Notes: a model not told the origin generated them from the sequence alone. Positions 443-61,530 are shown, numbered from the stretch's first letter. The stretch is 64,000 nucleotides of DNA from Octopus sinensis (GCF_006345805.1 NC_043019.1:13019360-13083359); one strand, 5' to 3'. Translations and numbers: made by a program.

Positions 443-896
443 GAGAGTACTATTATTCATAGGTACCGCACACTAGGAGGGACCTTTGCAGTCAAAACTA
501 CTAAAATAAAAAAATTTTAAATTTATATTTTTCACCGGAATATTTCAATACTGAATTTTTGTTCCGAATAGGCAAATTGTTACCGAAATGCATTGCGAAT
601 AAGCCCGCCATTTTCATAGATATGTAAAGATAAACATTCGTACATGCTACGACGAATTCTTACGGTTGACTGTCGGGTATGCTATCTTGTGTTTTTTCTT
701 ACATTCTTGAGTTCGTTGCACTGAAGAGCATAGAATGCATATTCTGCATTGATTGCGAAATCACAGTGATATGTAACTAAATTCTGTTTTTAAATGACTT
801 GCTTTGAAGTTTTGCATTCGGTAAAATTTGTTTTTTTAGTAGTTTTGACTGCAAAGGTCCCTCCTAGCGTGCGGTACCTATGAATATAGTACCCTC
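443..896. mobile_element. Non-autonomous TIR element (MITE), ~455 bp, GAG...CTC termini
   Basis: ~55-bp imperfect TIR GAG(A/G)GTACTAT(T)ATTCATAGGTACCGCAC.CTAGGAGGGACCTTTGCAGTCAAAACTACTAAAA; flanked by TA-rich tracts. Confidence 0.8.
715..777 (+). ncRNA. Type-I hammerhead ribozyme-like motif inside a TIR element
   Basis: GTTGCA / CTGAAGA / GCA..TGC / GAAA / TCAC-A-GTGA / TA / TGTAAC: 6-bp stem I, intact core, 3-bp stem II base, AUA site. Confidence 0.5.
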
Positions 897-1052: not shown

Positions 1053-1515
1053 GAGATGTTAAGAATTATTATTATTATAAAGTCACTTAATGTAACAGAT
1101 ACAAAATACTTATCCTGTCCAATTAAAGAAAAGAAGTAAAAAGAATCTTTAAACCTAATTCTGTGCTCTTTCCACTTTTACTTTTTACCTATGTATGTAT
1201 ATGAATATACACATGTATATATACACTTATGTACATACATTATGTGTGTGTGTGTATTCACGTATATTATATATATATATATATATTTATCTTTGGTTAA
1301 TGAGAGATGGAAGATACGAGAATTTTTATTAATCACTACAATTGTTTTGATGCACCTGGCATCAATTCCATGAGATTACGGAGGTGCTTCAGCATGGCCA
1401 CGGTCAAACAACTGAAACAAGTAAAAGATAAAAGAAATGTGTATACATATATATATATATATAAGAAATACTAAATTTCTAAATCTCTCGTAGAGACATG
1501 TACGGTGGTGGGGCG

Positions 1516-7804: not shown

Positions 7805-9900
7805 TATCATCATCATCATCATCATCTAATGTCCGTTTTCCATGCTAGCATGGGTTGGACGGTTCAACTGGGGTCTGGGAAGCCAGAAGGCTGCGCCAGG
7901 CTCCAGTCTAATCTGGCAGTGTTTCTACAGCTGGATGCCCTTCCTAACGCCAACCACTCCGAGAGTGTAGTGGGTGCTTTTTATGTGCCACCTGCACAGG
8001 TGCCAGACAAGGCTGGCAAACGGCCACGATCGAATGGTGCTTTTTACGTGCCACTGGCACGGGGGCCAGACGAGGCTGGCAATGGCCACAATCGGATGGT
8101 GCTTTTTATGTGCCACCGGCACGGAGGCCAGTCGGGGCGGCGCTGGCAACGGCCACGTTTGGACGGTTCTCTTACGTGCCACCGGCTCTGGTATCTCAGC
8201 TACAATTTCCATTGATGTTGAAAGATTTCGATTTCGATTTTCACTTGCCTCAACAGGTCTTCACAAGAAGGAAAGGTATGCATAAGTGGGCTGGCTACGT
8301 CCCAGGTAGAGGCCATGGGTTATGGTCTCACTTGTCCTGCCGGGTCTTCCCACGCACAGCATACTTCCATAGGTCTCGGTCTCTGGTCATTTCCTCGGTG
8401 AGACCTAAAGTTTGAAGGTCGTTCTTCACCACCTCATCCCAGGTTTTCCTGGGTCTACCTCTTCCACAGGTTCCCTCAACTGCCAGGGTGTGGCACTTTT
8501 TCACACAACTATCTTCATCCATTCTCGCTACATGACCATACCAGCGCAAACGTCTCTCTTGCACACCACAACTGATGCTTCTTAGGTCCAACTTTTCTCT
8601 CGAGGCACTTACACTCTGTCGATCATGAACACTGACATTACACATCCATCGGTGCATACTGGCTTCATTTCTCACGAGCTTACGCATATCCTCAGCAGTC
8701 ACAGTCCAAGTTTCACTGCCATGTAGCATGGCTATTCGTACACGTGTCATACAGTCTGCCTTTTATTCTGAGCGAGAGGCCTTTTGTCACCAGCAGAGGT
8801 AAGAGCTCTCTAAACTTTGCCCAGGCTATTCTTACTCTAGCAGTTACACTTTCAGCACACCCGCCCCCGCTACAGACTTGGTCACCTAGGTAACAGAAGC
8901 TATCAACTACTTCTAGTTTTTCTCCCTAGAATGTGGCAGAAGTTGGTCTCTGAGCATTTTCAGTGTCTATTGCTCCTGAGCATCTGCCACATACAAAAAC
9001 TATCTTCCCAGTTAGCCTTCCTTTGACATTGCTGCACCTCTTATGTGTCCATAGCTTACACTTGGTGCATCTTATAGAGTTTCTACCTATGCCTTTTCTA
9101 CGGATCGAGCAGGGCCATCTACCTGAAGGCGTTTGTGATTTGCCTGCCTTCCTACATATTAGGACTTTGGTTTTAGCTAGGTTGATTTTAAGGCCCTTCG
9201 ATTCTAATCCTTGTCTCCACACTTGAAACTTTGCCTCTAGTTCTGATAGTGACTCAGCAATTAGAGCAAGGTCATCAGCATATAGGAGCTCCCAGGGGCA
9301 TCCTGTCTTGAATTCCTCCGTTATTGCCTGGAGGACTATGATAAATAGGAGGGGGCTGAGGACTGAACCTTGGTGGACCCCTACCTCTACTCTGAATTCT
9401 TTAGTGTACTCGTTGCCAACCCTCACCTTACTTACAGCGTCTCTGTACATGGCTTGCACAGCTCTCACTAACCATTCATCTATCCCTATTTTCCTCATTG
9501 ACCACCAGATAAGGTATCGGGGGACCCTGTCAAAGGCTTTCTCCATGTCAACGAAAGCCAGGTACAGGGGCTTATCCTTGGCTAGGTATTTCTCCTGCAG
9601 CTGTCTCACCAGAAATATGGCATCAGTGGTGCTTTTTCCTGGCACGAAACCAAACTGCATCTCATCCAAGCTGACTCTCTCCCTAATCAGTTGGGCTATG
9701 ATCGTCTCCGTAACCTTCATTACCTGATCCAACAGCTTGATACCTGTGTAATTATTTGTATCTAAAGCGTCACCCTTACCTTTGTAGCAGTTTTGACTAT
9801 TATGCTGCTACACCAGTCATTGGGTATGACTCCTTCGTGTATCACCTGGTTAACTATACGGGTGACTAGGCTGCTCCAACATGGCCACAGCTGCATGACT
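7805..9900 (-). mobile_element. 5'-truncated RTE-clade LINE: RT domain, C-terminus, minisatellite 3'UTR, (ATG)n tail
   Basis: ORFs 8926-9732 (QFGFVPG, DMEKAFDRV, GVHQGSVLSP, YADD) and 8328-8750 (RRLRWYGHV, RGRPRKTW); frameshifted. Confidence 0.92.
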
Positions 9901-14264: not shown

Positions 14265-15699
14265 CAAACTTTACTGTACTAACTGAAGTAGCATTAATTA
14301 TTAAGCATTAAATAATAAATGCATAATAATTAATGTCTACTGGTTAGCACAGAAAAAAAAATGCGGATAATTTAGGCAAAGGAGTGGCTGTGTGGTAAGT
14401 AGCTTGCTTACCAACCACATGGTTCCGGGTTCAGTCCCACTGCGTGGCACCTTGGGCAAGTGTCTTCTGCTATAGCCTCGGGCCGACCAATGCCTTGTGA
14501 GTGGATTTAGTAGACGGAAACTGAAAGAAGCCCATCATATATATGTATATATGTGTGTGTATGTTTGTGTGTATGTGTTTGTCCCCCTAGCATTGCTTGA
14601 CAACCGATGCTGGTGTGTTTACGTTCCCGTCACTTAGCGGTTCGGCAAAAGAGACCGATAGAATAAGTACTGGGCTTACAAAGAATAAGTCCCGGGGTCG
14701 ATTTGCTCGACTAAAGGCGGTGCTCCAGCATGGCCGCAGTCAAATGACTGAAACAAGTAAAAGAGTAAAGTTTTAAATATCAGAACACTTCCACCTGGGC
14801 TCCATTGGTGGCACACAATTGCTAAGTTATTTTTGTTTTTTTACAATACCACCATGACTGATATCCAAACTACAGTGGAGAAGGCTAGCCACTGGATTTG
14901 GTTAAAAAGAGACGATGAGCGATGGCTAGAAGAATATTGAGCTTTATTTGATAACCAGTTGATCTAGCAAGCGGGGCCTCATATCAGTGAGGAGGACCGG
15001 TGCACATTGATGCCGTCGAGAGGTAGGCCCCGAAACGGCGCGCATTCTCTCCTGATGACCCCATACACTTGCTGGCTTCTGGTATACTCTCTCTTTTGCT
15101 CTTTTATTTGTTTCAGTCATTTGACTGCGGCCATGCTGGAGCACCGCCTTTTTTAGTCAAGCAATTTGACCCCAGGACTTATTCTTTGTAAGCCTAGTAC
15201 TTATTCTATCGGTCTCTTTTGCCGAACCGCTAAGTAACGGGGACGTAAACACACCAGCATCGGTTGTCAAGCGATGTTGGGGTGGGGGTGGGGGACAAAC
15301 ACAGACACACAAACATACACACACATATATACGACGGGCTTCTTTCAGTTTCCGTCTATCAAATCCACTCACAAGGCTTTGGTCGGCCCGAGGCTATAGT
15401 AGAAGACACTTGCCCAAGGTGCCACGCAATGGGACTGAACCCGGAACCGTGTGGTTGGTAAGCAAGCTACTTACCACACAGCCACTCTGCGGAGTTTTTG
15501 ACTGGTAGCACTTGCATGTGCAAGTTGTTTGCAAGACATCTGAAATTTTAAAATTGTAAACGGTAATTTATGGACACCCCTGTATATTTATTTGTTTCAG
15601 TCATGAGATTAGACTGCAGCCATGCTGGAGTACTTGCCTTGAATTTTAGTCAAACAAACTGACTCCAGTACTTATTTTTTTAAAGCTGGGTATTTATTC

Positions 15700-20792: not shown

Positions 20793-23700
20793 TAATAATG
20801 ATAATAATAATAATAATAATGATAATAATAATAGTTCTTTCTAGTTTTGGCACCAAGCCAGCAATTTTGAAGGGAAGGTGATGTCGGTTACAGAGACCCC
20901 CAGTGCACAACCGTTGCTTGTTTCATCGACCACGAAGGGACGAAAGGCTAAAGTCGACCTCGATGGAATATAATGATAATAAACCCCACAGAATGTGCTT
21001 TCCACGAATTGAGTTCGTGAAATCTATTTTCGTGACATCATGATATTATATATATATAACAACTCTGCAAAGCCAATAAAGCAGTCTCCGCCTACAAGGT
21101 TGCTCGGTCTGCTAGAAACAGCAGTCAAATCTCATTCGAATCTCTACGGTGAACATAGTGGGACACAATGAAGCATGTACTTCCTGTTATACTAAAAAAG
21201 TGAAAAAGTGAAAAAAGAGAGAATGGATGGTCACGACTAGAACGCCTTTGATTATATAGGTCTGCTCGATCAAGGTGTGACTTGGGGTTAAACAACATCT
21301 GATTGTGGATTGACACGAGTCACACGAGCACACGAGTCAACAAAGCAGCCTCCGTCTGCGCGTGTTTGCTCAACCTGCTAGAAATGATAGCCAGATATTC
21401 CTCATGTCACGTTCTTCAAATGTGACGGAACATCTCTCGTCATAGGCAGCTCGATCGAAGCTGACATGGGGGTTGAAGAACATCGACAACAATAATAAAT
21501 ATAGAATTGGGGTAACGTTGCTGGGATATGTTTTTTCCCCTCAATAATGTAGTCCTGTGCATTTTTCACTTAGACATATTCTATGAGTCAGAGTAAGACT
21601 CGTTTAGCCCCAGGCCTGCTCTGATCGAGCAAACCTATGATCAAAACCACTTTAGCGGTGAATATTCCGCCTTTTATTCAAACGATATGTATACTCTCTC
21701 TCTCTTTTACTCTTTTACTTGTTTCAGTCACATTTTGACTGCGGCCATGCTGGAGCACCGCCTTTAGTCGACCAAATTAAAGAATTTTAGTCAAAGAAAT
21801 TGACCTCAGGACTTATTCCTTTGTAAGCCCAGTACTTATTCTATCGGTCTGTTTTGCCGAACCGCTAAGTTACGCGGACGTAAACACACCAGCATCTGTT
21901 GTCAAGCGATGTTGCGGGGACAAACACAGACACACAAACATACGAACTACACACACACACACACACGCATCACACACACGCACCACATACACACGCACCA
22001 CACACACACATACACATATATACGACAGGCTTCTTTCAGTTTCCGTCTATCAAATCCACTCACAAAGCTTTGGTCGGCCCGAGGCTATAGTAGAAGACAC
22101 TTGCCCAAGGTGCTACGCAGTGGGAATGAACACGGAACCATGTGGTTGGTAAGCAAGCTACTTACCCACACAGCCACTCCTGCGCCTGTATCTGTAATTA
22201 TATAATAAAAAATATGTCCTTTATTTAAAAAAGATTTAGCAGCTATTTCTGACAGATTAAGCAACCACGGAGATTAGTTCGTGGCTACCTTATTAAACCC
22301 GAGGTCACCATTGACTGAGAAAAGTTGTGAATAAAATCATTCTTCCGGTGACAAAACAGTTTTTAAAATTTCTCATTTATTTCCCTGTGTATCTAGGACG
22401 ATATTATTTTAATGTAACCACTTGCTTAAGAAGATTACGGGTGGTTAATCTGAGGGGAGACGTGACTGCTATTTCTTGCAGGTCAAACGACCAGAGGACT
22501 CACTTAAAGCCTGGTTGTAGATTAGTTTTGATTGTAAAACTATTATCAATGACATTCCTGTCATGACCATTCCACCTTTTCTTTTCTTGACATAGAACTT
22601 ACATTATCCAATGTATTTAGAACAAAAGAAAAAAAGAGAAAGAAAAAGAAAAACACAGATAGAAACTCTTATAGGCGCAGGAGTGGCTGTGTGGTAAGTA
22701 GCTTGCTAACCAACCACATGGTTCCGAGTTCAGGCCCACTGCGTGGCATCTTGGGCAAGTGTCTTCTGCTATAGCCCCGGGCCAACCAATGCCTTGTGAG
22801 TGGATTTGGTAGACGGAAACTGAAAGAAGCCTGTCGTATATATGTATATATATATATATATGTGTATATGTGTTTGTGTGTCTGTGTTTGTCCCCCTAGC
22901 ATTGCTTGACAACCGATGCTGGTGTGTTTATGTTCCCGTCACTTAGTGGTTCGGCAAAAAAGACCGATAGAATAAGTACTGGGCTTACAAAAGAATAAGT
23001 CCCAGGGTCGAGTTGCTCGACTAAAGGCGGTGCTCCAGCATGGCCGCAGTCAAATGACTGAAACAAGTAAAAAAGTAAAGAGTAAGCGTGATTTGAGGAA
23101 GATTTGGCTACTATTTTTAACAGGTCGAGTAACCACGTAGAAGTCCCTCCTACATTTGTACTGATAATAGAAACTTATTTTTGTAACTAATGGTGTTGTT
23201 ATAATTCATGGTAGTTGCAGTTTGTTGATAATGTGTTGACTACAGATGTGGGTGGCAGATCTGGAGCAGAGATTATTTGGCACACAGTAGTACTAATAGG
23301 GGAAACACTGCATCATGTATCTTGATGCTGCAGGAATCTCTCTACTCTAATATATTAATGAAATCAATACGTCATGCCACAAAAAAAAAAAACAAAAAGA
23401 CAGCCAAGCTTATGGAAAGCGATGAAATGGGACTGCGAAAATAAAATAAAATAAAATAAATAAATAACTACACAAAAAATTAAAAAAAAAAGCATCAATA
23501 AGTTTAGCTGTGCTGTTTAGTGAGTAACTGTGTGACACCAATCTTACTAAATGTTATTATATTTTATTGATTTCATTGTATTGAATTGTGGATGAATCAT
23601 AATAACCAGCCAACAGACCAGAAAGAGAAAATCTGGTGCACTGTGTGCTGCTTTTAATATTGGGCAAATCAAACTAGAGTAAATATAGCAGAGGCTCCGT

Positions 23701-30362: not shown

Positions 30363-31044
30363 TATATATATATGCATGCATGTGTGTATACTGTTGAACA
30401 TGCAGAACTCAGAATAACTAAATACAATGCAAAATGAAATGTCGTTAAATTTTCTACACAAACAATAACGGTTGGGGAGGGTGTGGTGTATATATTATCA
30501 TTATGACCATCATCATCATCATTCTCATTATATATGTATAAAAATATGTGTGTATGGATTTAACATTTATTTTATTTTTTTTGCTAGTATAAAATATATA
30601 TTTGATGTCGGTCCCTGACTAACCAATAAAACAATATACGCACATGCTTAAGGTATCAAGGGAAAGGAGAGAAAGATTACAGTATTTTTTAGTGACCCAT
30701 TTTACCATGTCCCATATGAGAAATTACAACGGTATTTTTTTTTAATGAATAAAAAAATGTGCTCCAAATTTGCATTTTATCCTGTAGCTCTAAATGTATA
30801 ATTGGATTATGTTATTTATTGCTATTACATGTTAAACAAATTAAATATATAAATAAATAAATATATAAATAAATAAATAGGCGCAGGAGTGGCTGTGTGG
30901 TAAGTAGCTTGCTAACCAGCCACATGGTTCCGGGTTCAGTCCCACTGCGTGGCACCTTGGGTAAGTGTCTTCTACTATAGCCTCAGGCCGACCAAAGCCT
31001 TGTGAGTGGATTTGATAGACAGAAACTGAAAGAAGCCCGTCGTA

Positions 31045-31082
<38 letters not shown>

Positions 31083-32287
31083 TGTGTGTGTTTGTGTGTC
31101 TGTGTTTGTCCCCCTAGCATTGCTTGACAACCGATGCTGGTGTGTTTATGTCCCCCGTTACTTAGCGGTTCGGCAAAAGAGACCGATAGAATAAGTACTG
31201 GGCTTACAAAAGAATAAGTCCCGGGGTCGAGTTGCTCGATTAAAGGCGGTGCTCCAGCATGGCCGCAGTCAAATGACTGAAACAAGTAAAAGAGTAAAGA
31301 ATAAAGAGTATAAAAAAAAAAAAACTGAAATGAACAAATCTCACATGCTTTGTAACCATGTGGTTTTGAGTTCAATTTAGTCCCACTGCAGGGCACCTTG
31401 GGCAAGTGTCTTCTATAATAGCTGCAAGCTGACCAATACTTTGTGAGGGAATTTGGTAGATGGAGAATGTGTGGAATATATATATGAGCATATGTGTGTG
31501 TGTATGTGTGTGTGTGTGTGTGTGCTCCCCTACTGCTTGACAACCAGTGTTGGTTTGTTTATGTTCCCATAACTTAGCAGTTTGGCAAAATAAACTAATA
31601 GAATAAGTATCAGAATTTTGAAGAAAAAAAAAAGCACGGGGGGGATCAATTTGTTGGATTAAACACTTCAGGGCATTGCCCCTACATGGTTGCAGTCCAA
31701 TGACTGAAACAAGGAAAATATAAAAGATACAAGAAAATGGTAGTGTGCTCTGATTTAAAAGATGGTTTAGAAGAAAAGCGAGTTTTATTATATTCAGTAC
31801 TTATGCTTTAATATTTTGTCATTTTAGATAATGTAAGTGTAAAGGTTATGATAAGCCTATCGGTTGACAAAGTGTTTCAAGGGTGGAGTCCAAGTGTTTA
31901 ATATAATTATGTTAATAGTTATCACTTCTGAAAGATTAACATTCTTACATATAATATATACATACATACATGCATGCATGCATACATACTTATCATTTAA
32001 GTATATATGAGCAAGTTTAGATATGCAAGCATATGAATGAGAAGGCGTATAAATCTACACGTATACATAGCTGCATATATACTAAAATACCCTGTTGTCG
32101 ATGTTGAGATTCCAATGAAGGAGCCTTGGATCTAGGTTAGAAACCAGCTCTTTCTCTGTTGGCAAGAAATCTTGAAATAAAACTGAATAATGACATACTA
32201 AGCCTGAAAGAGATGAGTCTCTGATAAAGGCTAGCATAACTTTAAGTTGTATGGAACTGAGTCAAATTGATTTAAATTACACACACA

Positions 32288-35208: not shown

Positions 35209-36950
35209 CCAGTTTGCGGCAGTGATTCATTTGGTTGCCTTTGCACTGCAACGGTAATCGCACTGATTGAGATTAGCACTCACTGTGAGATAACATTCGG
35301 CACACATTTACATCAACCGCTTTAGTGCAAATACAGTTTATCTACCCAAACTATGTCCCTGTGCAGGATGGTTATGTGGTATTATTCTTTTAAGGCGGTG
35401 AGCTGGCAGAAACGTTAGCACGCCGGGCGAAATGCGTAGCCGTATTTCATCTGTTGTTACGTTGCGAGTTCAAATTCCGCCGAGGTCGACCTTACCTTTC
35501 ATCCTTTCGGGGTCGATTAAATAAGTACCAGTTACGCACTGGGGTCGATGTAATCAACTTAATACCTATGTCTGTCCTTGTTTGTCCCCTCTGTGTTTAG
35601 CCCCTTGTGGGTAATAATGAAATAGGTATTATTCTTGAATAAGGTCACTGACCGCACAAGTCAGATCAACTTCATGTATTTACAATCACGTGAATTCAAA
35701 AATTAACTTTAGTGTGGTAGAGTTCAATACAGGTGTCACACACTGTGGCATATCACATTGTGAACAATAGTATGTAGTTTGCTTACATTTCTCTTTTGCT
35801 TTACATACTGTGCGTCTCTTTGAAGCATTTGTCTTCTTGGTTGTGGGGGGAAGCAGTTGTGGAAAATATCCATGTCCCTTACTGTGCGATGAGGAGAGAG
35901 TCCGGCCTGTGGATGTCCTTATGTTCTGTACTTTGGCAGGTCTGATGTTCTATCATTTCGTGGAACAATAGATTCCTGAATGTCAATCCATCCTCCACAC
36001 CGCCAAGCATCTGCCAAACCAAATGTGAGTTCATGACACACATGTCAACAATATACAAGAAAATTTTTTTGTACTATTTCACAAATTTTCTCACCAATTT
36101 GTGTGTCATTGCCATCTGATCTGAGCAATTGACCCCACCTGTCTTTTCATTGTATAAAATAACCACACTCGGTTTCATTATGTCATTATCATCCACATCT
36201 TGTTTCCTAGTGTCCTTCGTTCTTGCAGAATGTAGTGTGGATATCATGCAGACATTTTTCTTGTCACACTACACTAAAGTGAGAATGCCACTATCGGTGC
36301 ATTGATACATTCCTTCTTACTTTCAAAATTTTATCTTGTGTAGATTGGGTGGCATGTTTTTCCTGTGCGTCCTCACAGTCCCACAGGCATTAGTCCTCCT
36401 CACCTGCAGCTTCAGGAAGAGTTCTGGACTGGAAAACCAGTTATTCATATAAATATTGTAGCCTTTGTCAAACAAGTTTTTATTCAGCAACAACATGACA
36501 TCAGTTGATGCTAGAGTAGATGCTGGAAGATCGAATCTGTCTTGATCAGTGTAGATTTTGTAATTCCACATGTACCCACAGGCTCTGTCAGTTGACTGGC
36601 ATACATTATAAACCTTGATTCCAAAGCAGATACATTTGGTTTGGTTGTGTTGTTTGAATTGGAGCCTTTCCTTGAATTTCCACAAACTCTCATCTATAAA
36701 TAATATCTTGTGTGGGGACATACACTGTTCCAGAATTTTCAGTCACTTTATCAATGATAGGCCTATTTTGTGCAGCCTGTCATCCTGGTTCTCACCTGAG
36801 CTGAAATGTAGATTTCAAAGAAGCACCAAAATTCAATCACCTGGCATTGTTTCTGGAAAGAAAGGTGTCGACGTGGCTGGACCCCATATTTTGGTGACTT
36901 TGATACAGTTGGATTGATATCGGTATGCTTAATTGATACTGAAGAATATC
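35209..36950 (-). pseudogene. Degenerate piggyBac element/transposase, interrupted by a SINE at 35393-35628
   Basis: IDESL..FK.R..FKQ...K...FGIK, NWFSSPELF, ACGTVR..RK; Cys-rich tail at about 35720-35820; TTAA|CC terminus at 35205-35210. Confidence 0.82.
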
Positions 36951-41260: not shown

Positions 41261-43171
41261 GTCTCTTTATTATACTTTAGCCTCTCAAACATCTGGTTTA
41301 AAGCCATCTCTCCCTCTCTCAACTACCCTCCTCCATCACTCAGTCACTCGTAACTAAGGGCTTTTTTCTGTCTCTTCTCTTGCAAGCTACTTTGCAACCT
41401 CATTAGTGCTGGTGGCATGAAACAAAAAAAGCACCCACTACCCACAGACAAGTGGGTGACATTAGGAAAGGCATCCGGCTGTAGAAACCATACCCCAGAG
41501 CTGACATTGAACTCAATACAGTCTTGCAGCTTGTCAGATCTTATCAAACCATCCAACCCATATGGATGGAAGCACTCTGTCAGTTCCGACGACGAGGGTT
41601 CCGGTTGTTCCGAATCAACGGAACAGCCTGCTTGTGAAATTAACGTGTAAGTGGCTGAGCACTCCACAGACACGTGTACCCTTAACGTAGTTCTCGGGGA
41701 TATTCAGCATGAAACAGAGAGTGACAAGGCCGGCCCTTTGAAATACAGGTACAACAGAAACAGGAAGAAAGAGTGAGAGAAAGTTGTGGTGAAAGCGTAC
41801 AGCAGGGATCATCACCATCCCCTGCCGAAGCCTCATGGGGCTTTAGGTGTTTTCGCTCAATAAACACTCACAACGCCCGGTCTGGGAATCGAAACCGCGA
41901 TCCTACGACCACGAGTCCGCTGCCCTAACCACTGGGCCATTGTGCCTCCACCCAACCCATATCAGCATGGAGAAGGAGCATTAAAAGACGATGGTGCCAT
42001 TGATGATAATGAAACAATTTGAAAGAGACATTCTATTGATTCACAAAGAATTGGTAACAAGTGGTTGTTGTAGATTGCTATTCTTTCTGTCTAATTCAAT
42101 ACTTGCCTTTGTTCTTTCTTGTGCTCTTGTTACTACCAAACTTCTGCAATTCTTGCCGCACATTCTTATTACCCATCGAAACAATGTCAAATTCATTACA
42201 AAATCAATAATGCTCAACAGTCTAGACAAAACTATTGAGTGTTCAATGATATAAGTAATATCCGCATATTGATTTTTTTTCTGGGTTTTTTTTTTTAACA
42301 CCATACACATCTGCTACATATATTGGATTGTTAGATAAATGTTTGTTTGTCGTTTTTTTTTTTCTACTTGGCACTCCATTGTTGTATGTCTGAAAAGAGG
42401 TAAAATTAATTCAAATTTTGAAAAATGATAACAAAACTTGTAGATATTTGCTGATATTTCTAGCTAGTTCAGAGACCACGTAGAAGTTTCCTTTGTTTTC
42501 TCCACTCTCCAATCTACTGTTGGCATTCTCACTAATACTCACCTTTTGTATCTTGAGATTCTTTGGCATCTTGTCACCACCATCTCTGTCTTTTTTTCAG
42601 CTACTTCCATCCCCACAAAAAGTAAATAATAAATAAAATAAATAAATAGGCACAGGCATGGCTATGCTGTAAGAAGCTTGCTTCCCAACCACATGGTTCC
42701 GGGTTCAGTCCTACTGTGTGGAACCTTGGGCAAATGTCTTCTTAATATGATCTAGGACCGACCAAAGCCTCGTGAGTGGATTTGGTAGGCGGAAACTGAA
42801 AGAAGCCTTTCTTATTGTTCTTTACCACACAGCCACACCTGTGCTTATACAGCCACTCTTGTGCCTATATAGTCATTCTTGTGTCTATATAGCTGGATTC
42901 TTTATGTGAATCCATGTGTTGAAGCAAATTTTGTTGTTCCTGGGGAGACACAATATAACAATCATACATCACTGGTTTCAATGCATTTTGCATCAACGGT
43001 TATATTTAATACTTTTTTTTGCTGTATTGTGTATTCGTTATTTTTTGCATCTGTTATTGATTATTGATCTTATATAAAAATGAAACTGTAGCCTTTAATT
43101 TGCTGTTTTTCCATACACAAACCGAGAATATATCTTGCTGAACAGTTGTTATTTTAATGAGATATATTTTG

Positions 43172-43281
43172 TAATCACCTGAAGAGACACATCTACACCG
43201 TCAGATACTCCTAAACCAGTTGTTAAGTATCCCACCCATGAGAGATCGATGCTAGATGTGTCGAAATAATTGTAGTGATTA
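43172..43281 (+). ncRNA. Type-I hammerhead ribozyme with long stem II, sense in HS1BP3 intron 1
   Basis: TAATCAC CTGAAGA GACACATCTA [57 nt] TAGATGTGTC GAAA TAATTG TA GTGATTA. 7-bp stem I, 10-bp stem II, canonical core, GUA site; AATAAA immediately 3'. Confidence 0.8.
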
Positions 43282-43395
43282 ATAAACATTCTCATATCCT
43301 CCAGCTTCCTTATTAGTCAAATACCTAATGAACATTGTGAAAATGAATATGCTCTACCAGTAAGCTACCAAGTGTATACCATACAATTTATTATC

Positions 43396-43473
<78 letters not shown>

Positions 43474-43565
43474 TTGGTAGACGCCATGATATATATATTT
43501 GAGACGCCATGATAGATCGTTAGCCACTACACACATTTTTTTCTCTCCTTGTTTTTTCTGTGTAC

Positions 43566-43691: not shown

Positions 43692-43744
<53 letters not shown>

Positions 43745-43842
43745 ATATATATATATATGTATATATTTTTTCTTTTAAGTATTTTATTTAAAAATTTTAC
43801 TTTTGTATCTATTAATTTTTCATGTATAAATATATCTTTTAG

Positions 43843-44005
43843 GCAACTGAAAAATCCAGAAACAGGAATTGATGTCTCTGTACCAACATATGAGGAAATT
43901 CCAGGATTACTAACTAAATCAGTGGAATACCAAGTTACTGTGGTAACAAATTTGGCAATATTCAAATCTCCAAAGCATAAAGAATCTGACATTGTTCAGT
44001 TTGTG
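43843..44005 (+). CDS. HS1BP3: HS1BP3 exon 2 (RQLKNPETGIDVSVPTYEEIPGLLTKSVEYQVTVVTNLAIFKSPKHKESDIVQFV), PX domain start
   Basis: ttttag|G...GTG|gtaag. Resembles HS1BP3 TG.D..VP...E......VEYQ..VVT.LA.FKS.KH...D.VQF. Confidence 0.93.
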
Positions 44006-45206
44006 GTAAGTTAATAAAACAGACCAAATTATCAACATAATCGATACAAATTGCACTGCTACAGCCTTCACAAAACAATTTAAATTAGAAATTAACCTGT
44101 TCAATTTCCAAGGCGGTGCTCCAGCATGGCCACAGTCAAATGATTGAAACGAGAGCATAAAGACATGAGATTTATGTCCATGCCCCTGCACACAATCTGT
44201 CTCTGACAAACCTTCTCCCTATAACCCATCTCCCTAACACCTCCCTCATCCCCCCTACTCGTGTTCACCACCTGCTGTATTTCCCTCCCCTCTGACTCTT
44301 ACTCTCCTGTCACACCTTGGTGGACCTAACTGCACACAATGTGTCCCTGATGAATCTCTTCCCTGCTACATATCGTCCTAACACCCCTTCTCTCTATTTG
44401 TGTCCATTCACTACATTCCCTCCTCTACACATTACTCTCTCATTTCACATCAACATCGACTTACCCCCCCCCACACACCTTATCCAATCTTTGGTTTCTC
44501 CTTCCCTTATATGCCCTTCCTTATAACTTGAGTATAGTACCCAACCATCACATCTTCACTATCTTTCTTCCACTCTGTTTCTTTTCTCTCTCTTTCTCCT
44601 ACCAAGGTAGCCATCATCATCATCATCATCGTTTAACGTCCGTTCTCCGCGCTAGCATGGGTTGGACAGTTCGACCGGGGTCTGGGAAGCCAGGAGGCTG
44701 CACCAGGCTCCAGTCTGATTTGGCAGTGTTTCTACAGCTGGATGCCCTTCCTAACGCCAACCACTTTGTGAGTGTAGTGGGTGCTTTTTACATACCACCA
44801 GCACAGGTGCCAGGGAAGTCTGGCAGCGGCCATGATCGGTTGGTGCTTTTAACGTGCCACCAGCATGGAAGCCAGTCAAGGTGGCGCTGGCATCGGCCAC
44901 GTTCGGATGGTGCTTTTTACGTGCCACCGGCACAGAAGCCACTTCCCTCAATACAACACCTCCCCACCACATTCAGTCAAGGGGTCTTGTCTTGTAAGTT
45001 ATTTGGTGACCTCATAAGAAGCACCCAGTGCGCTCTGCAAAGTGGCTGGTATAAGGAAGGGCATCCAACTGCAGAAACCTTGTCTAAGCAGACAGTAGAA
45101 CCTGTTGCAGTCTTCTGACTTGCTGGCTCCTGTCAAACTGTCCAACCCATGCAAGCATGGAAAATGGACATTAAATAATAATAATGATGACGATGATGAT
45201 GACGAT

Positions 45207-48300: not shown

Positions 48301-48364
48301 AAAATTTGTCTAATATAGCAGCATTTTCAAACTTCATTTTTTACAAATATATATATATATATAT

Positions 48365-48778
48365 AGGCGCAGGAGTGGCTGTGTGGTAAGTAGCTTGCTA
48401 ACCAACCACATGGTTCCGGGTTCAGTCCCACTGCGTGGCATCTTGGGCAAGTGTCTTCTGCTATAGCCCCGGGCCGACCAATGCCTTGTGAGTGGATTTG
48501 GTAGACGGAAACTGAAAGAAGCCTGTCGTATATATGTGTATATATATGTATGTGTATGTTTGTTTGTGTGTCTGTGTTTGTCCCCCTAGCATTGCTTGAC
48601 AACCGATGCTGGTGTGTTTATGTCCCCGTTACTTAGCGGTTCGGCAAAAGAGACCGATAGAATAAGTACTGGGCTTACAAAAAAAGAATAAGTCCCGGGG
48701 TCGAGTCGCTCGACTAAAGGCGGTGCTCCAGCATGGCCGCAGTCAAAGGACTGAAACAAGTAAAAGAGTAAAAGAGTA
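48365..48778 (+). mobile_element. tRNA-derived SINE family A, intact copy. Others (+): 5706, 14378, 22674, 23948, 29070, 30879, 33446, 45280, 47339. Others (-): 15090-15487, 16210-16625, 21700-22186, 32355-32845, 56960-57367
   Basis: A-box TGGCTGTGTGG, B-box GGTTCAGTCCC, internal (TA)/(TG) microsatellite, (AAGAGTA)n tail; more than 15 near-identical copies. Confidence 0.9.
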
Positions 48779-50529: not shown

Positions 50530-50737
50530 GTTGGAAAGAAATTTAATGAGTTTGAAGATTTGCACACGTCCCTGAATGATAAATATTCTGGTATAGCTTT
50601 CCCACCATTTCCTAAAAAGGTATTATTAACTACAGATGATGTATATAAAGAAAGACGATCCGCATTAGATAAGCTCATGAAATTCTGCAGCAAAACTGAA
50701 CGCCTTTCTAAGAGTTATCTATTTTTACAGTTTCTTG
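50530..50737 (+). CDS. HS1BP3: HS1BP3 exon 3 (VGKKFNEFEDLHTSLNDKYSGIAFPPFPKKVLLTTDDVYKERRSALDKLMKFCSKTERLSKSYLFLQFL+G), PX domain
   Basis: aag|GTT...CTTG|gtgag. PX hallmarks: (K)F.EF..LH..L, PP.P.K, ERR..L, FL. Confidence 0.93.
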
Positions 50738-51127
50738 GTGAGTTTCAGTTTCATTATTATTATCATTATTATTATTTCTCTTATTATATTATTATAGTTG
50801 TGGTAATTATTCCAGCCAGCATTTAATTATAATTTCTTTTCATTTTTGTATTGTAAGATTCTTGAGCTGAAGTACTCTGTTCAATATTGAAATGTATTAT
50901 AGTTGTATCTTGGGAGGGTCATTATGCTAATAATAAGTACATGCATTGATTATGTTTTACTTCTTTATTTTTTATTTGTCTTCCTAATCACATGGTTTTA
51001 GGTTTAGCCTCACTGTGTGACACCTTGGGCAAGTGACTTCTACTGTAGCCTCAAGCAGACCATAGCCTTCTGAGGGGATTTGGTTGACGAGAACTGAAGG
51101 AAGCCCATAGTGTGTGTGTGTGCACGT

Positions 51128-52246: not shown

Positions 52247-52289
52247 TCCAGAGACTAGTTTCTGAGTCTCTGCTCATCATCAGTCTGGA
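52247..52289 (-). ncRNA. Minimal type-I hammerhead ribozyme, antisense in HS1BP3 intron 3
   Basis: Reverse complement: TCCAGA CTGATGA TGAG-CAGAGA-CTCA GAAA CTAG TC TCTGGA. Canonical core, palindromic ACUAGU, GUC site, extendable stem I. Confidence 0.8.
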
Positions 52290-60829: not shown

Positions 60830-61530
60830 TCAGATACATGCTTGTGTGTGTATGAAGGGGAGAAAATCAAGTGTAGTGTTGGCGAATCTCAGGAAGCATG
60901 GAAGTTTTGAAGGATGCAGTGCTCCGACAACTAACAACTGATGCCGGAAGTTTGTTCCATGCTTCAGCGTGTGTATGGAGGGGAGAATATCAGGTGTAGT
61001 GTTGGCGAATCTCAGGAAGCATGGAAGTTTTGAAGGATGCAGTACTCCGACAACTAACAACTGATGCCAGCAGTTTGTTCCATGCTTCAGCGTGTGTATG
61101 GAGGGGAGAATATCAGGTGTAGTGTTGGCGAATCTCAGGAAGCATGGAAGTTTTGAAGGATGCAGTACTCCGACAACTAACAACTGATGCCAGCAGTTTG
61201 TTCCATGCTTCAGCGTGTGTATGGAGGGGAGAAAATGAGGTGTAGTGTTGGCGAATCTCAGGAAGCATGGAAGTTTTGAAGGATGCAGTACTCCAACAAC
61301 TAACAACCGATGCCGGCAGTTTGTTCCATGCTTCAGCAACTCTCAGCGTGAAAAAATGTTTCCTGAAGTCATGGGAGCTGTGCTGTTTTCTGACTTTGTA
61401 AATATGTCCACGGGTGTTAGATGGGTGGAGTTTGAAAAGATGCTCAGAGTTATTGTTTGTACGATGGTTGATAATTTTATGGGTGTCTGCCAAATCAGCT
61501 GCCAGACGTCGGAGTTTGTGTATGTATGTG
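60830..61530 (-). mobile_element. CR1-like LINE 3' relic with 120-bp tandemly amplified terminus
   Basis: NTRGHIYKV...FRKHFFTLRVAEAWNKLP, a CR1/L2-type C-terminus; about 4 units of 120 bp at 60845-61340. Confidence 0.75.

What the first reader, a model, noticed from the sequence alone, without database searches (positions are those of the whole stretch)
43150..43300. Best-formed sense hammerhead in HS1BP3 intron 1, with a 57-nt structured loop II
Seen: canonical CUGAAGA/GAAA/GUA core, 7-bp stem I extendable via ATGAGA/TCTCAT across an internal loop, 10-bp perfect stem II enclosing a further hairpin (GATACT/AGTATC), and AATAAA directly 3'. Stem III is a near-palindrome (AUAAUUGU). It is not masked by an inverted arm, so it could cleave the pre-mRNA about 570 nt before exon 2.
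Basis: partly seen in the sequence, partly recalled or inferred. Interest (0 to 1): 0.78.

Follow-up and report, generated by a model that had tools for sequence, protein, structure and literature searches.

The report
Hammerhead ribozyme relic in octopus intron
A complete type I hammerhead self-cleaving RNA motif lies in the sense strand of an HS1BP3-like intron, but it looks like a well-preserved single copy of a ribozyme-carrying repeat, not a ribozyme the gene has adopted.

Summary
It has CUGAAGA, GAAA and GUA, a 7-bp helix I, a perfect 10-bp helix II around a 57-nt insert, a 2-bp helix III with an AAUU loop, and AATAAA directly 3'. No motif this good appeared in 40 Mb of random sequence. 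Rfam Hammerhead_1 aligns over its full length but scores 21.1 bits, below the 34-bit cut-off. The gene on the + strand encodes a PX domain and resembles HS1BP3. The motif is in sense, 569 nt upstream of an internal exon.

It belongs to a dispersed repeat of about 350 nt. A partial, core-mutated copy lies at 1292-1366(-). A 79%-identical copy sits on contigs from another sequencing project. Two more copies are visible only as antisense ORFs. Majority rule across copies gives an ancestral complete core, and the window copy is closest to that consensus. The other full copy keeps the core but has 4/10 helix II pairs and 2/7 helix I pairs broken, with no compensatory change.

Helix III is the palindromic type that published work links to cleavage as a dimer, and no partner copy is nearby. 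Best reading: a near-consensus solo copy of a retroelement-type hammerhead, with doubtful activity and no sign of host use.

The parts
42970..43321 (+). Approximate extent of the repeat unit that carries the hammerhead (about 352 nt, 32% G+C).
   Evidence: Window 42995-43304 aligns to L002 (reverse complement) 511-828 at 78.7% over 319 nt. Weaker similarity reaches back to about 42970. The in-window partial copy extends the 3' side to 43321.
43157..43162 (+). 5' strand of the possible helix I extension (ATGAGA).
   Evidence: It pairs with 43290-43295 in the minimum-free-energy fold. Two of its 6 pairs are broken in L002.
43172..43178 (+). Helix I, 5' strand (TAATCAC).
   Evidence: It is identical in L002.
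43179..43185 (+). Core C3-A9 (CUGAAGA, with N7 = A).
   Evidence: It is identical in L002.
43186..43195 (+). Helix II, 5' strand (GACACATCTA), starting with G10.1.
   Evidence: It forms 10 perfect pairs with 43253-43262. Four of the 10 pairs are broken in L002.
43196..43252 (+). 57-nt insert closing helix II, with an inner hairpin GATACT 43204-43209 / AGTATC 43226-43231.
   Evidence: It is 82% identical in L002, where the inner hairpin is not kept.
43253..43262 (+). Helix II, 3' strand (TAGATGTGTC), ending with C11.1.
43263..43266 (+). Core G12-A15.1 (GAAA).
   Evidence: It reads AAAA in the copy at 1292-1366(-).
43267..43274 (+). Helix III and cleavage triplet. U15.2-AAUU-G16.2 is followed by U16.1 and A17, and the predicted scissile bond is 43274/43275.
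   Evidence: The relatives have CAAUUG, a perfect palindrome ACAAUUGU. The duplex energy of the dimer helix is -4.6 kcal/mol here and -8.4 kcal/mol for the ancestral form.
43275..43281 (+). Helix I, 3' strand (GTGATTA).
   Evidence: It is identical in the 1.3-kb copy and reads ATGGGTA in L002.
43281..43286 (+). AATAAA hexamer 7 nt after the cleavage site. It is probably the element's own poly(A) signal, near its 3' end.
   Evidence: It is present in all three DNA copies. A/T-rich simple repeats follow in each copy.
43290..43295 (+). 3' strand of the possible helix I extension (TCTCAT).
1292..1366 (-). Partial copy of the element (its 3' 77 nt) in the same window, fused to a 5'-truncated SINE tail. 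GAAA has become AAAA.
   Evidence: 79% identity, E = 8e-13. The SINE profile covers 1356-1444.
43843..44006 (+). Downstream exon of the host gene, holding the start of the PX domain. It is flanked by a ttttag acceptor and a gtaagt donor.
   Evidence: Joined to the exon at about 50530-50739 it matches Pfam PX at E = 1.2e-12.
43149..43295 (-). Accidental 48-codon ORF antisense to the hammerhead. I used it only as a handle to find relatives.
   Evidence: The relatives are P0002, P0004 and P0005. Homology to L002 runs 150 nt beyond the ORF.

Best explanation
This is a nearly consensus, solitary copy of an interspersed repeat of about 350 nt. The ancestral repeat carried a type I hammerhead ribozyme near its 3' end, just before an AATAAA signal and an A/T-rich tail.

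In the source element the ribozyme would have cut multimeric or read-through transcripts into unit lengths. That is how it works in metazoan hammerhead-bearing retroelements (non-LTR retrozymes, Penelope-like element repeats, and the newt and Schistosoma satellites). Its helix III is 2 bp plus a palindromic loop, ancestrally ACAAUUGU. Published work says this design cleaves well only when two copies pair to form one long helix III.

Here a single copy landed in the sense orientation in an intron of an HS1BP3-like gene.
- Shown: the motif, its pairing, the repeat family and the decay of the other copies.
- Inferred: the retroelement origin, the dimer requirement, and weak or absent cleavage of the host pre-mRNA.

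I put detectable self-cleavage of the monomer in vitro at high Mg2+ at roughly one in three. I consider host-level function unlikely.
For: Motif and significance.

Repeat family:
- An in-window partial copy at 1292-1366(-) has 79% identity, E = 8e-13.
- Contigs L002 and L003 from other sequencing runs are 78.7% identical over 319 nt, with unrelated flanks on both sides.
- Two further copies, P0004 and P0005, are seen as antisense ORFs.

Ancestral hammerhead:
- The window and L002 both keep all 15 core, 10.1/11.1 and cleavage-site bases.
- Read back through their codons, P0004 and P0005 each differ from CUGANGA at one position. Both keep the Phe codon that corresponds to GAAA, and both have lost GUA.
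- The majority base at every core position gives a complete core.
- At the 8 sites where the window and L002 differ in the shared 3' part, the 1.3-kb copy agrees with the window at 5 and with L002 at 2. The window copy is therefore close to the ancestor.

No structural constraint between copies:
- There are 0 compensatory changes.
- Stems are 76% identical, flanks 77%.
- L002 does not fold as a hammerhead.

Helix III fits the description in PMC4209133 and PMC7229834: 1-2 bp, a palindromic loop, and dimer-dependent activity. A single PLE-type motif showed no detectable cleavage in PMC4209133.

The unit is 352 nt with 32% G+C. That is within the 170-400 nt, low-GC range given for animal retrozymes (PMC7229834).

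No tandem or sense-strand partner lies nearby.
Against: - Only five copies are known, and DNA is in hand for three of them.
- No tandem array, reverse-transcriptase neighbour or target-site duplication was found. The class of mobile element is therefore inferred.
- Whether L002 is a paralogue or the orthologous intron of another species is unresolved.
- The window copy has all 17 helix I and II pairs and the full core intact, which could hint at constraint. However, window-specific change is only about 3% (2 of 62 sites). At that rate about a quarter of copies would stay intact by chance.
- Invertebrate type I hammerheads with a 2-bp helix III plus tetraloop can cleave efficiently as monomers (PMC7229834), so inactivity is not established.
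Confidence: 0.72

Rival explanations
1. It is a hammerhead the host has adopted. It self-cleaves the HS1BP3-like pre-mRNA in the intron and so tunes mRNA output, like the conserved intronic hammerheads of amniotes (RECK, C10orf118). The 57-nt helix II insert might be a regulatory module.
For: - It is in sense orientation, 569 nt before an exon.
- The core and both long helices are fully intact, while every other known copy is damaged.
- Helices I and II dominate the predicted ensemble even with 300-nt flanks.
- Intronic type I hammerheads derived from retroelements are known to be active (PMC3088659).
Against: - There is no compensatory change and no extra conservation of the stems in the related full copy.
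- A more distant cephalopod contig carrying the same exon has no related sequence in the 1 kb upstream.
- Helix III is weakened in the window copy (C to U gives a U.G pair), and it is the dimer-type helix with no partner.
- Helix II at 10 bp does not fit the canonical loop-loop geometry (PMC4209133).
- The Rfam score is below the gathering cut-off.
Confidence: 0.1
2. It is a chance resemblance: ordinary inverted repeats in AT-rich intron or repeat DNA that happen to flank hammerhead-like core strings.
For: - Rfam reports nothing at its curated threshold.
- By my extrapolation, a genome of a few Gb would hold a few chance motifs of this quality.
- Loose descriptor hits occur by chance at 0.41 per window.
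Against: - No motif this good appeared in 40 Mb of random sequence. That implies about 1e-4 or less per 64-kb window.
- The same core is present in an independent, 21%-diverged copy.
- Degraded copies are each one step from the core consensus.
- The palindromic helix III is a hallmark not imposed by my descriptor.
Confidence: 0.05
3. The conserved feature is really the 45-48-codon ORF on the opposite strand, which encodes a small peptide.
For: - The ORF is open in the window and in three relatives.
- dN/dS is 0.34 over 22 differences.
Against: - Relatives could only be found if the ORF was open, so there is ascertainment bias.
- Homology to L002 continues about 150 nt past the stop codon at similar identity.
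- The start and stop positions differ among copies.
Confidence: 0.03

Closest known systems
Canonical metazoan type I hammerhead (Rfam RF00163: newt satellite 2, Schistosoma Sm-alpha, cave-cricket satellite)
   Same: - Open helix I.
- Core CUGANGA, GAAA and UH.
- G10.1:C11.1.
- Helix III of 1-2 bp capped by a palindromic tetraloop. The Rfam consensus has GAAACGCGCGUC; here it is GAAAUAAUUGUA, ancestrally GAAACAAUUGUA.
   Different: - Helix II is 10 bp with a 57-nt insert, not 4 bp plus a short conserved loop.
- Helix I is 7 bp, followed by an internal loop.
- No conserved loop-loop nucleotides are recognisable.
- The score of 21.1 bits is below the 34-bit gathering cut-off.
Animal non-LTR retrozymes (PMC7229834; bioRxiv 10.64898/2026.07.22.740005)
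   Same: - The unit is about 350 nt with low G+C and carries one type I hammerhead.
- Helix III is 2 bp plus a tetraloop, as described for invertebrate retrozymes.
- Dispersed solo monomers are reported alongside the arrays.
   Different: - No tandem array is seen here.
- Circular RNA is untested.
- The vertebrate survey reports that retrozymes are depleted from introns, whereas this copy is intronic.
Hammerheads in the terminal repeats of Penelope-like elements (PMC4209133; PMC8557442)
   Same: - Helix II is longer than usual (7-8 bp there).
- Helix III is small and palindromic and implies action as a dimer.
- The position is near the 3' end of the repeat.
- The motifs occur widely and decay fast within genomes.
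   Different: - There is no unpaired base between A9 and G10.1.
- Helix I is longer here (7 bp against 4-5 bp).
- No reverse transcriptase / GIY-YIG ORF lies next to it. The only reverse transcriptase in the window is about 34 kb away and matches RVT_1.
Conserved intronic hammerheads of amniotes (RECK and C10orf118 introns; PMC3088659)
   Same: A type I hammerhead in the sense strand of an intron of a protein-coding gene, probably of retroelement origin.
   Different: - Those are conserved at the same locus across many species and cleave in vitro.
- Here no orthologous conservation is shown, and the only comparable copy has broken stems.

Membership tests
Hammerhead ribozyme, type I | Invariant core C3 U4 G5 A6 N7 G8 A9 / G12 A13 A14 / A15.1:U16.1 / H17. 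| tested here: met
   CUGAAGA 43179-85, GAAA 43263-66 and U-A 43273-74.
Hammerhead ribozyme, type I | Three helices around the core with helix I open, and a G10.1:C11.1 pair at the base of helix II. | tested here: met
   Helix I is 7 bp, helix II is 10 bp starting with G:C, and helix III is 2 bp plus AAUU. Helices I and II are in the minimum-free-energy fold and in 35-69% of the ensemble.
Hammerhead ribozyme, type I | Score at or above the Rfam RF00163 gathering threshold. | tested here: not met
   21.1 bits against 34, seen only in a 136-nt search. There is no match in the whole-window or 700-nt searches. The 63-nt insertion in the model's loop II explains much of the shortfall.
Hammerhead ribozyme, type I | Helices supported by compensatory changes among relatives. 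| tested here: not met
   There are 0 pairs with a change on both sides. L002 breaks 4/10 helix II pairs and 2/7 helix I pairs. Only two full DNA copies were available.
Hammerhead ribozyme, type I | Canonical metazoan geometry for the loop-loop contact: helix I about 6 bp, helix II about 4 bp, with conserved loop bases (PMC4209133). | tested here: not met
   Helix II is 10 bp and closed by 57 nt. By eye I saw no clear complementarity between loop II and the helix I internal loop. Some other tertiary contact cannot be excluded.
Hammerhead ribozyme, type I | Site-specific self-cleavage giving 2',3'-cyclic phosphate and 5'-OH ends. | not testable with these tools
   This needs in vitro transcription or mapping of RNA ends.
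Animal non-LTR retrozyme | Head-to-tail tandem repeats of 170-400 bp, each with one type I hammerhead. | tested here: not met
   There is no second copy in tandem. Solo monomers of such families are, however, reported (bioRxiv 10.64898/2026.07.22.740005).
Animal non-LTR retrozyme | Unit size and low G+C content. | tested here: met
   About 352 nt and 32% G+C. The unit boundaries are approximate.
Animal non-LTR retrozyme | Expression as linear and circular RNA of unit length. | not testable with these tools
   No transcript data were available. It is unknown whether the Logan contigs L002 and L003 come from RNA or DNA.
Penelope-like element terminal-repeat hammerhead | Location in a repeat flanking an ORF with reverse transcriptase and GIY-YIG endonuclease. 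| tested here: not met
   No such ORF lies within several kb. A non-autonomous derivative would lack one.
Exapted intronic hammerhead (amniote RECK / C10orf118 type) | Sense orientation inside an intron. | tested here: met
Exapted intronic hammerhead (amniote RECK / C10orf118 type) | Conservation at the orthologous position across species. | tested here: inconclusive
   L001 carries the same exon from a distant cephalopod (75% nt identity) and has nothing similar in the 1 kb upstream. The orthology of L002 is unresolved. No genome of a close relative was reachable.

The most novel reading that the evidence does not exclude
The octopus lineage has kept this one copy intact because it is an active sense-strand intronic ribozyme that cuts the HS1BP3-like pre-mRNA. 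Its unusual 10-bp helix II with a structured 57-nt insert would then act as a switch, for example through a bound factor or RNA editing, that sets cleavage. This would be an independent invertebrate parallel to the amniote intronic hammerheads.
Probability: 0.06. Interest if true: 0.7.

Novelty: new member of a known kind. Interest (0 to 1): 0.3.

Why it matters
Type I hammerheads in animal repeats are well known, so this one is not surprising in kind.

It does add a cephalopod family with an unusually long helix II that carries a 57-nt insert. A full-text search for 'hammerhead ribozyme' together with 'octopus' found five papers (four listed), and by title and abstract none describes one.

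It also offers a clean natural test case. It is a solitary, fully intact, dimer-type hammerhead in the sense strand of an intron. Assaying it would show whether such stray retroelement ribozymes damage or modulate host transcripts. The vertebrate survey reports retrozymes as depleted from introns and exons, which its authors read as selection against genic insertion.

Tried and rejected
1. Rfam at gathering threshold on the whole window, and at E<=10 on 700 nt, gave no hammerhead. Only a 136-nt search exposed the sub-threshold match.
2. I tested whether the motif derives from the abundant tRNA-type SINE of the window.
   - A profile of 12 copies hits dozens of sites but not 42970-43321.
   - It does cover 1356-1444, next to the partial copy, which is therefore a junction with a 5'-truncated SINE.
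   - Local alignments of the 5' half of the motif to that copy or to the SINE consensus score no better than shuffles.
3. I looked for the orthologous intron through the exon peptide. The only hit was one distant contig (L001) with no related upstream sequence.
4. A metagenome scan for a 20-mer across helix I and the core gave one unrelated G+C-rich contig. That is a chance match.
5. P0003 from the full HMMER scan is a six-fold tandem repeat protein that scores by summed weak matches. I judged it spurious.
6. I searched for a target-site duplication of 7 nt or more around the unit and found none.
7. I looked for other hammerheads in the window with strict and one-mismatch descriptors. Only 52247-52289(-) and 715-777(+) turned up, and neither has a paralogue or an Rfam hammerhead match.
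8. A coding role for the antisense ORF is unconvincing.
9. The sequencing-run accession of L002 did not lead to a paper that names the organism.
I did not attempt it.

Full report
**1. The observation**

- Helix I: TAATCAC (43172-78) pairs with GTGATTA (43275-81).
- Core: CUGAAGA (43179-85) is followed directly by GACACATCTA (43186-95).
- Helix II: that strand pairs perfectly with TAGATGTGTC (43253-62) and begins with the conserved G10.1:C11.1.
- GAAA (43263-66) is followed by UAAUUG and then U16.1-A17 (43273-74). The scissile bond would therefore be 43274/43275.
- AATAAA follows at 43281-86.
- ATGAGA (43157-62) and TCTCAT (43290-95) can extend helix I across an internal loop.
- The 57-nt loop II contains GATACT/AGTATC (43204-09 / 43226-31).

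**2. Is it more than chance?**
- The minimum-free-energy fold of 146 nt contains helices I and II and the extension (-31.9 kcal/mol, z = -3.4).
- With helices I and II enforced, the constrained ensemble holds 35-69% of the total for flanks of 0 to 300 nt.
- A type I descriptor run on both strands of the window finds this motif as by far the best hit.
- The same descriptor on 40 Mb of first-order Markov sequence built from the window gave 0.41 loose hits per 128 kb. It gave one hit with helix I + II of 13 bp or more, and none with 17 bp or more.
- By extrapolation, a motif this good is expected about once per ten thousand such windows. A whole genome of a few Gb could still hold a few by chance.

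**3. Infernal score**
- Rfam finds nothing at gathering thresholds in the whole window, and no hammerhead at E<=10 in a 700-nt slice.
- When only 136 nt are searched, Hammerhead_1 (RF00163) aligns over its full length (model 1-45) to 43173-43280.
- The score is 21.1 bits against a gathering score of 34, with E = 0.0043 for that small search.
- The alignment carries a 63-nt insertion in the model's loop II, which accounts for much of the penalty.

**4. Host gene**
- The exon at 43843-44006 has a ttttag acceptor and a gtaagt donor, and it starts on the third base of a codon.
- The joined translation matches Pfam PX at E = 1.2e-12.
- The motif is therefore intronic, in sense, and 569 nt upstream of that exon.
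- I could not verify that this is intron 1. The upstream exon would encode only about ten residues.

**5. It belongs to a repeat family**
- Within the window, 43245-43321 matches 1366-1292 on the minus strand at 79% identity (E = 8e-13). In that copy GAAA has become AAAA. The homology stops where a 5'-truncated copy of the window's abundant tRNA-type SINE begins.
- The SINE itself does not explain the motif. Its profile does not hit 42970-43321, and alignments of the motif's 5' half to it are at shuffle level.
- To reach other genomes I used the accidental 48-codon ORF antisense to the motif. It found P0002 (78% identity) on two 1.17-kb Logan contigs from runs SRR11869394 and SRR11869391.
- The reverse complement of L002 aligns to window 42995-43304 at 78.7% over 319 nt. 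Nothing else on either flank is alignable anywhere in the window.
- An exhaustive HMMER scan of 1.84 billion representative proteins added two more antisense-ORF copies: P0004 (54% identity over the homologous 45 residues) and P0005 (40%). It also gave a spurious repeat protein, P0003. All are from Logan assemblies.
- An island of about 320 nt with unrelated flanks, a second truncated copy 42 kb away on the other strand, and further diverged copies elsewhere are the signature of a dispersed repeat. I still cannot exclude that L002 is the orthologous intron of another octopod.

**6. What the copies say about the ribozyme**
- L002 keeps every core base, G10.1:C11.1 and GUA, and it scores 19.9 bits with Hammerhead_1.
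- L002's helix II is GACACACTGA/TAGATAGGTC, with 4 of 10 pairs broken. Its helix I 3' strand is ATGGGTA, with 2 of 7 pairs broken, including position 1.1.
- The helix I extension and the inner hairpin are also broken in L002. There is no compensatory change, and the sequence does not fold as a hammerhead.
- Identity between the two copies is 77% upstream, 83% across the motif, 76% in the helix I and II strands, 82% in loop II, 15/15 in the core and 22/23 in the 3' tail. The stems are thus no better kept than the flanks. With 21% divergence, 15 unchanged core bases have a chance probability of about 3%, which is only suggestive.
- Where the window and L002 differ in the shared 3' part (8 sites), the 1.3-kb copy sides with the window at 5, with L002 at 2 and with neither at 1. 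The window lineage has therefore changed little, about 3%.
- I read P0004 and P0005 back through their codons:
  - Both keep the Phe codon that is the complement of GAAA.
  - Their equivalents of Ser-Leu-Gln (the complement of CUGAAGA) are Ser-His-Arg and Ser-Pro-His. Each is one base from CUGANGA.
  - Both have lost the Tyr codon that complements GUA.
- The window's codons for both helix II strands (Asp GAT, Thr ACA) are the hub from which nearly all other copies differ by a single change.
- Majority rule therefore reconstructs an ancestor with a complete core and the long helix II, and the window copy is the closest to it.

**7. Helix III**
- In cis it is A15.1:U16.1 plus U.G, closed by AAUU.
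- In L002 and the 1.3-kb copy it is C:G, which makes ACAAUUGU a perfect palindrome.
- PMC4209133 states that most metazoan type I hammerheads have a 1-2 bp helix III capped by a small palindromic loop. It says this prevents efficient cleavage as a monomer and allows two neighbouring copies to form an active dimer. It also reports that single PLE-type motifs showed no detectable cleavage.
- PMC7229834 adds that a 2-bp stem plus tetraloop is the invertebrate pattern, and that many invertebrate retrozyme hammerheads do cleave efficiently.
- Here the intermolecular 8-bp helix is worth -4.6 kcal/mol, against -8.4 kcal/mol for the ancestral sequence.
- No second sense copy is in tandem or anywhere else in the window.
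- Helix II at 10 bp, against the canonical 4 bp, places loop II far from the helix I internal loop. The usual tertiary contact that gives activity at physiological Mg2+ is therefore not evident.

**8. Interpretation**
- The best-supported reading is a near-consensus solo copy of a hammerhead-bearing retroelement-type repeat: about 352 nt, 32% G+C, with the hammerhead near the 3' end, then AATAAA, then an A/T-rich tail.
- It lies by accident in the sense strand of an intron.
- It fits the known world of animal type I hammerheads (Rfam RF00163, non-LTR retrozymes, Penelope-like element repeats). It meets the core and helix criteria but fails the Rfam threshold, the tandem-array criterion and the canonical loop geometry.
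- The exaptation reading, an analogue of the RECK and C10orf118 intronic hammerheads (PMC3088659), is not excluded. It has no positive support beyond orientation and intactness. A distant cephalopod contig with the same exon (L001) has nothing related in the 1 kb upstream.
- Chance is very unlikely, given a second copy with the same core.
- The antisense ORF is almost certainly an artefact of how the relatives were found.

**9. Limits**
- No octopod genome could be searched by nucleotide sequence, so copy number, consensus, tandem arrays and orthology are all open.
- DNA for two of the five copies was not obtainable.
- Catalysis was not tested.

Noticed in passing
window 52247-52289 (-): A compact type I hammerhead-like motif lies antisense to the gene: tccaga-CUGAUGA-ugag/cagaga/cuca-GAAA-CUAG-UC^ucugga. 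It has a 6-bp helix I, a 4-bp helix II that starts with U:A instead of G:C, and a palindromic ACUAGU in place of helix III. No compact motif of this quality appeared in 40 Mb of random sequence. However, it has no Rfam hammerhead match and no paralogue in the window.
   Followed up: partly
window 715-777 (+): A weaker hammerhead-like motif has CUGAAGA, a 3-bp helix II base enclosing an AGAAU/AUUCU hairpin, GAAA, a 4-bp helix III, UA, and a 6-bp helix I with one G.U pair. It is within the range expected by chance at loose thresholds. It has no Rfam hammerhead match and no paralogue.
   Followed up: partly
window, many sites, for example 14273-14779, 22595-23088, 30781-31312, 48314-48778: A tRNA-derived SINE of about 450-500 nt is extremely abundant. 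More than 30 full or partial copies hit a profile built from 12 of them. One fragment lies at 44110-44154, just after the exon, and others lie at 42627-42871, just upstream of the hammerhead unit.
   Followed up: partly
window 1292-1366 (-) relative to 43245-43321 (+): The partial copy is inverted relative to the hammerhead copy. If the intron extends that far upstream, the pre-mRNA would contain a 77-nt stretch about 79% complementary to the 3' half of the hammerhead, 42 kb away.
   Followed up: no
window 8926-9732 (-) and 36323-36721 (-): There are fragments of other mobile elements: a reverse-transcriptase ORF (Pfam RVT_1, E = 5e-29) and a piggyBac-type transposase fragment (DDE_Tnp_1_7, E = 4e-23).
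   Followed up: partly
window 60830-61339 (-): An ORF is made of four near-identical units of about 41 residues (LKHGTNCWHQLLVVGVLHPSKLPCFLRFANTTPDILPSIHT). This indicates a tandem DNA repeat of about 123 bp. It has no meaningful Pfam match.
   Followed up: no
window 43396-43514 and 43692-43766: Microsatellites lie between the hammerhead unit and the exon: (TAA)13, a 23-nt unit repeated twice, and (TA)37. The two AT-rich tracts form long imperfect inverted repeats with each other.
   Followed up: no
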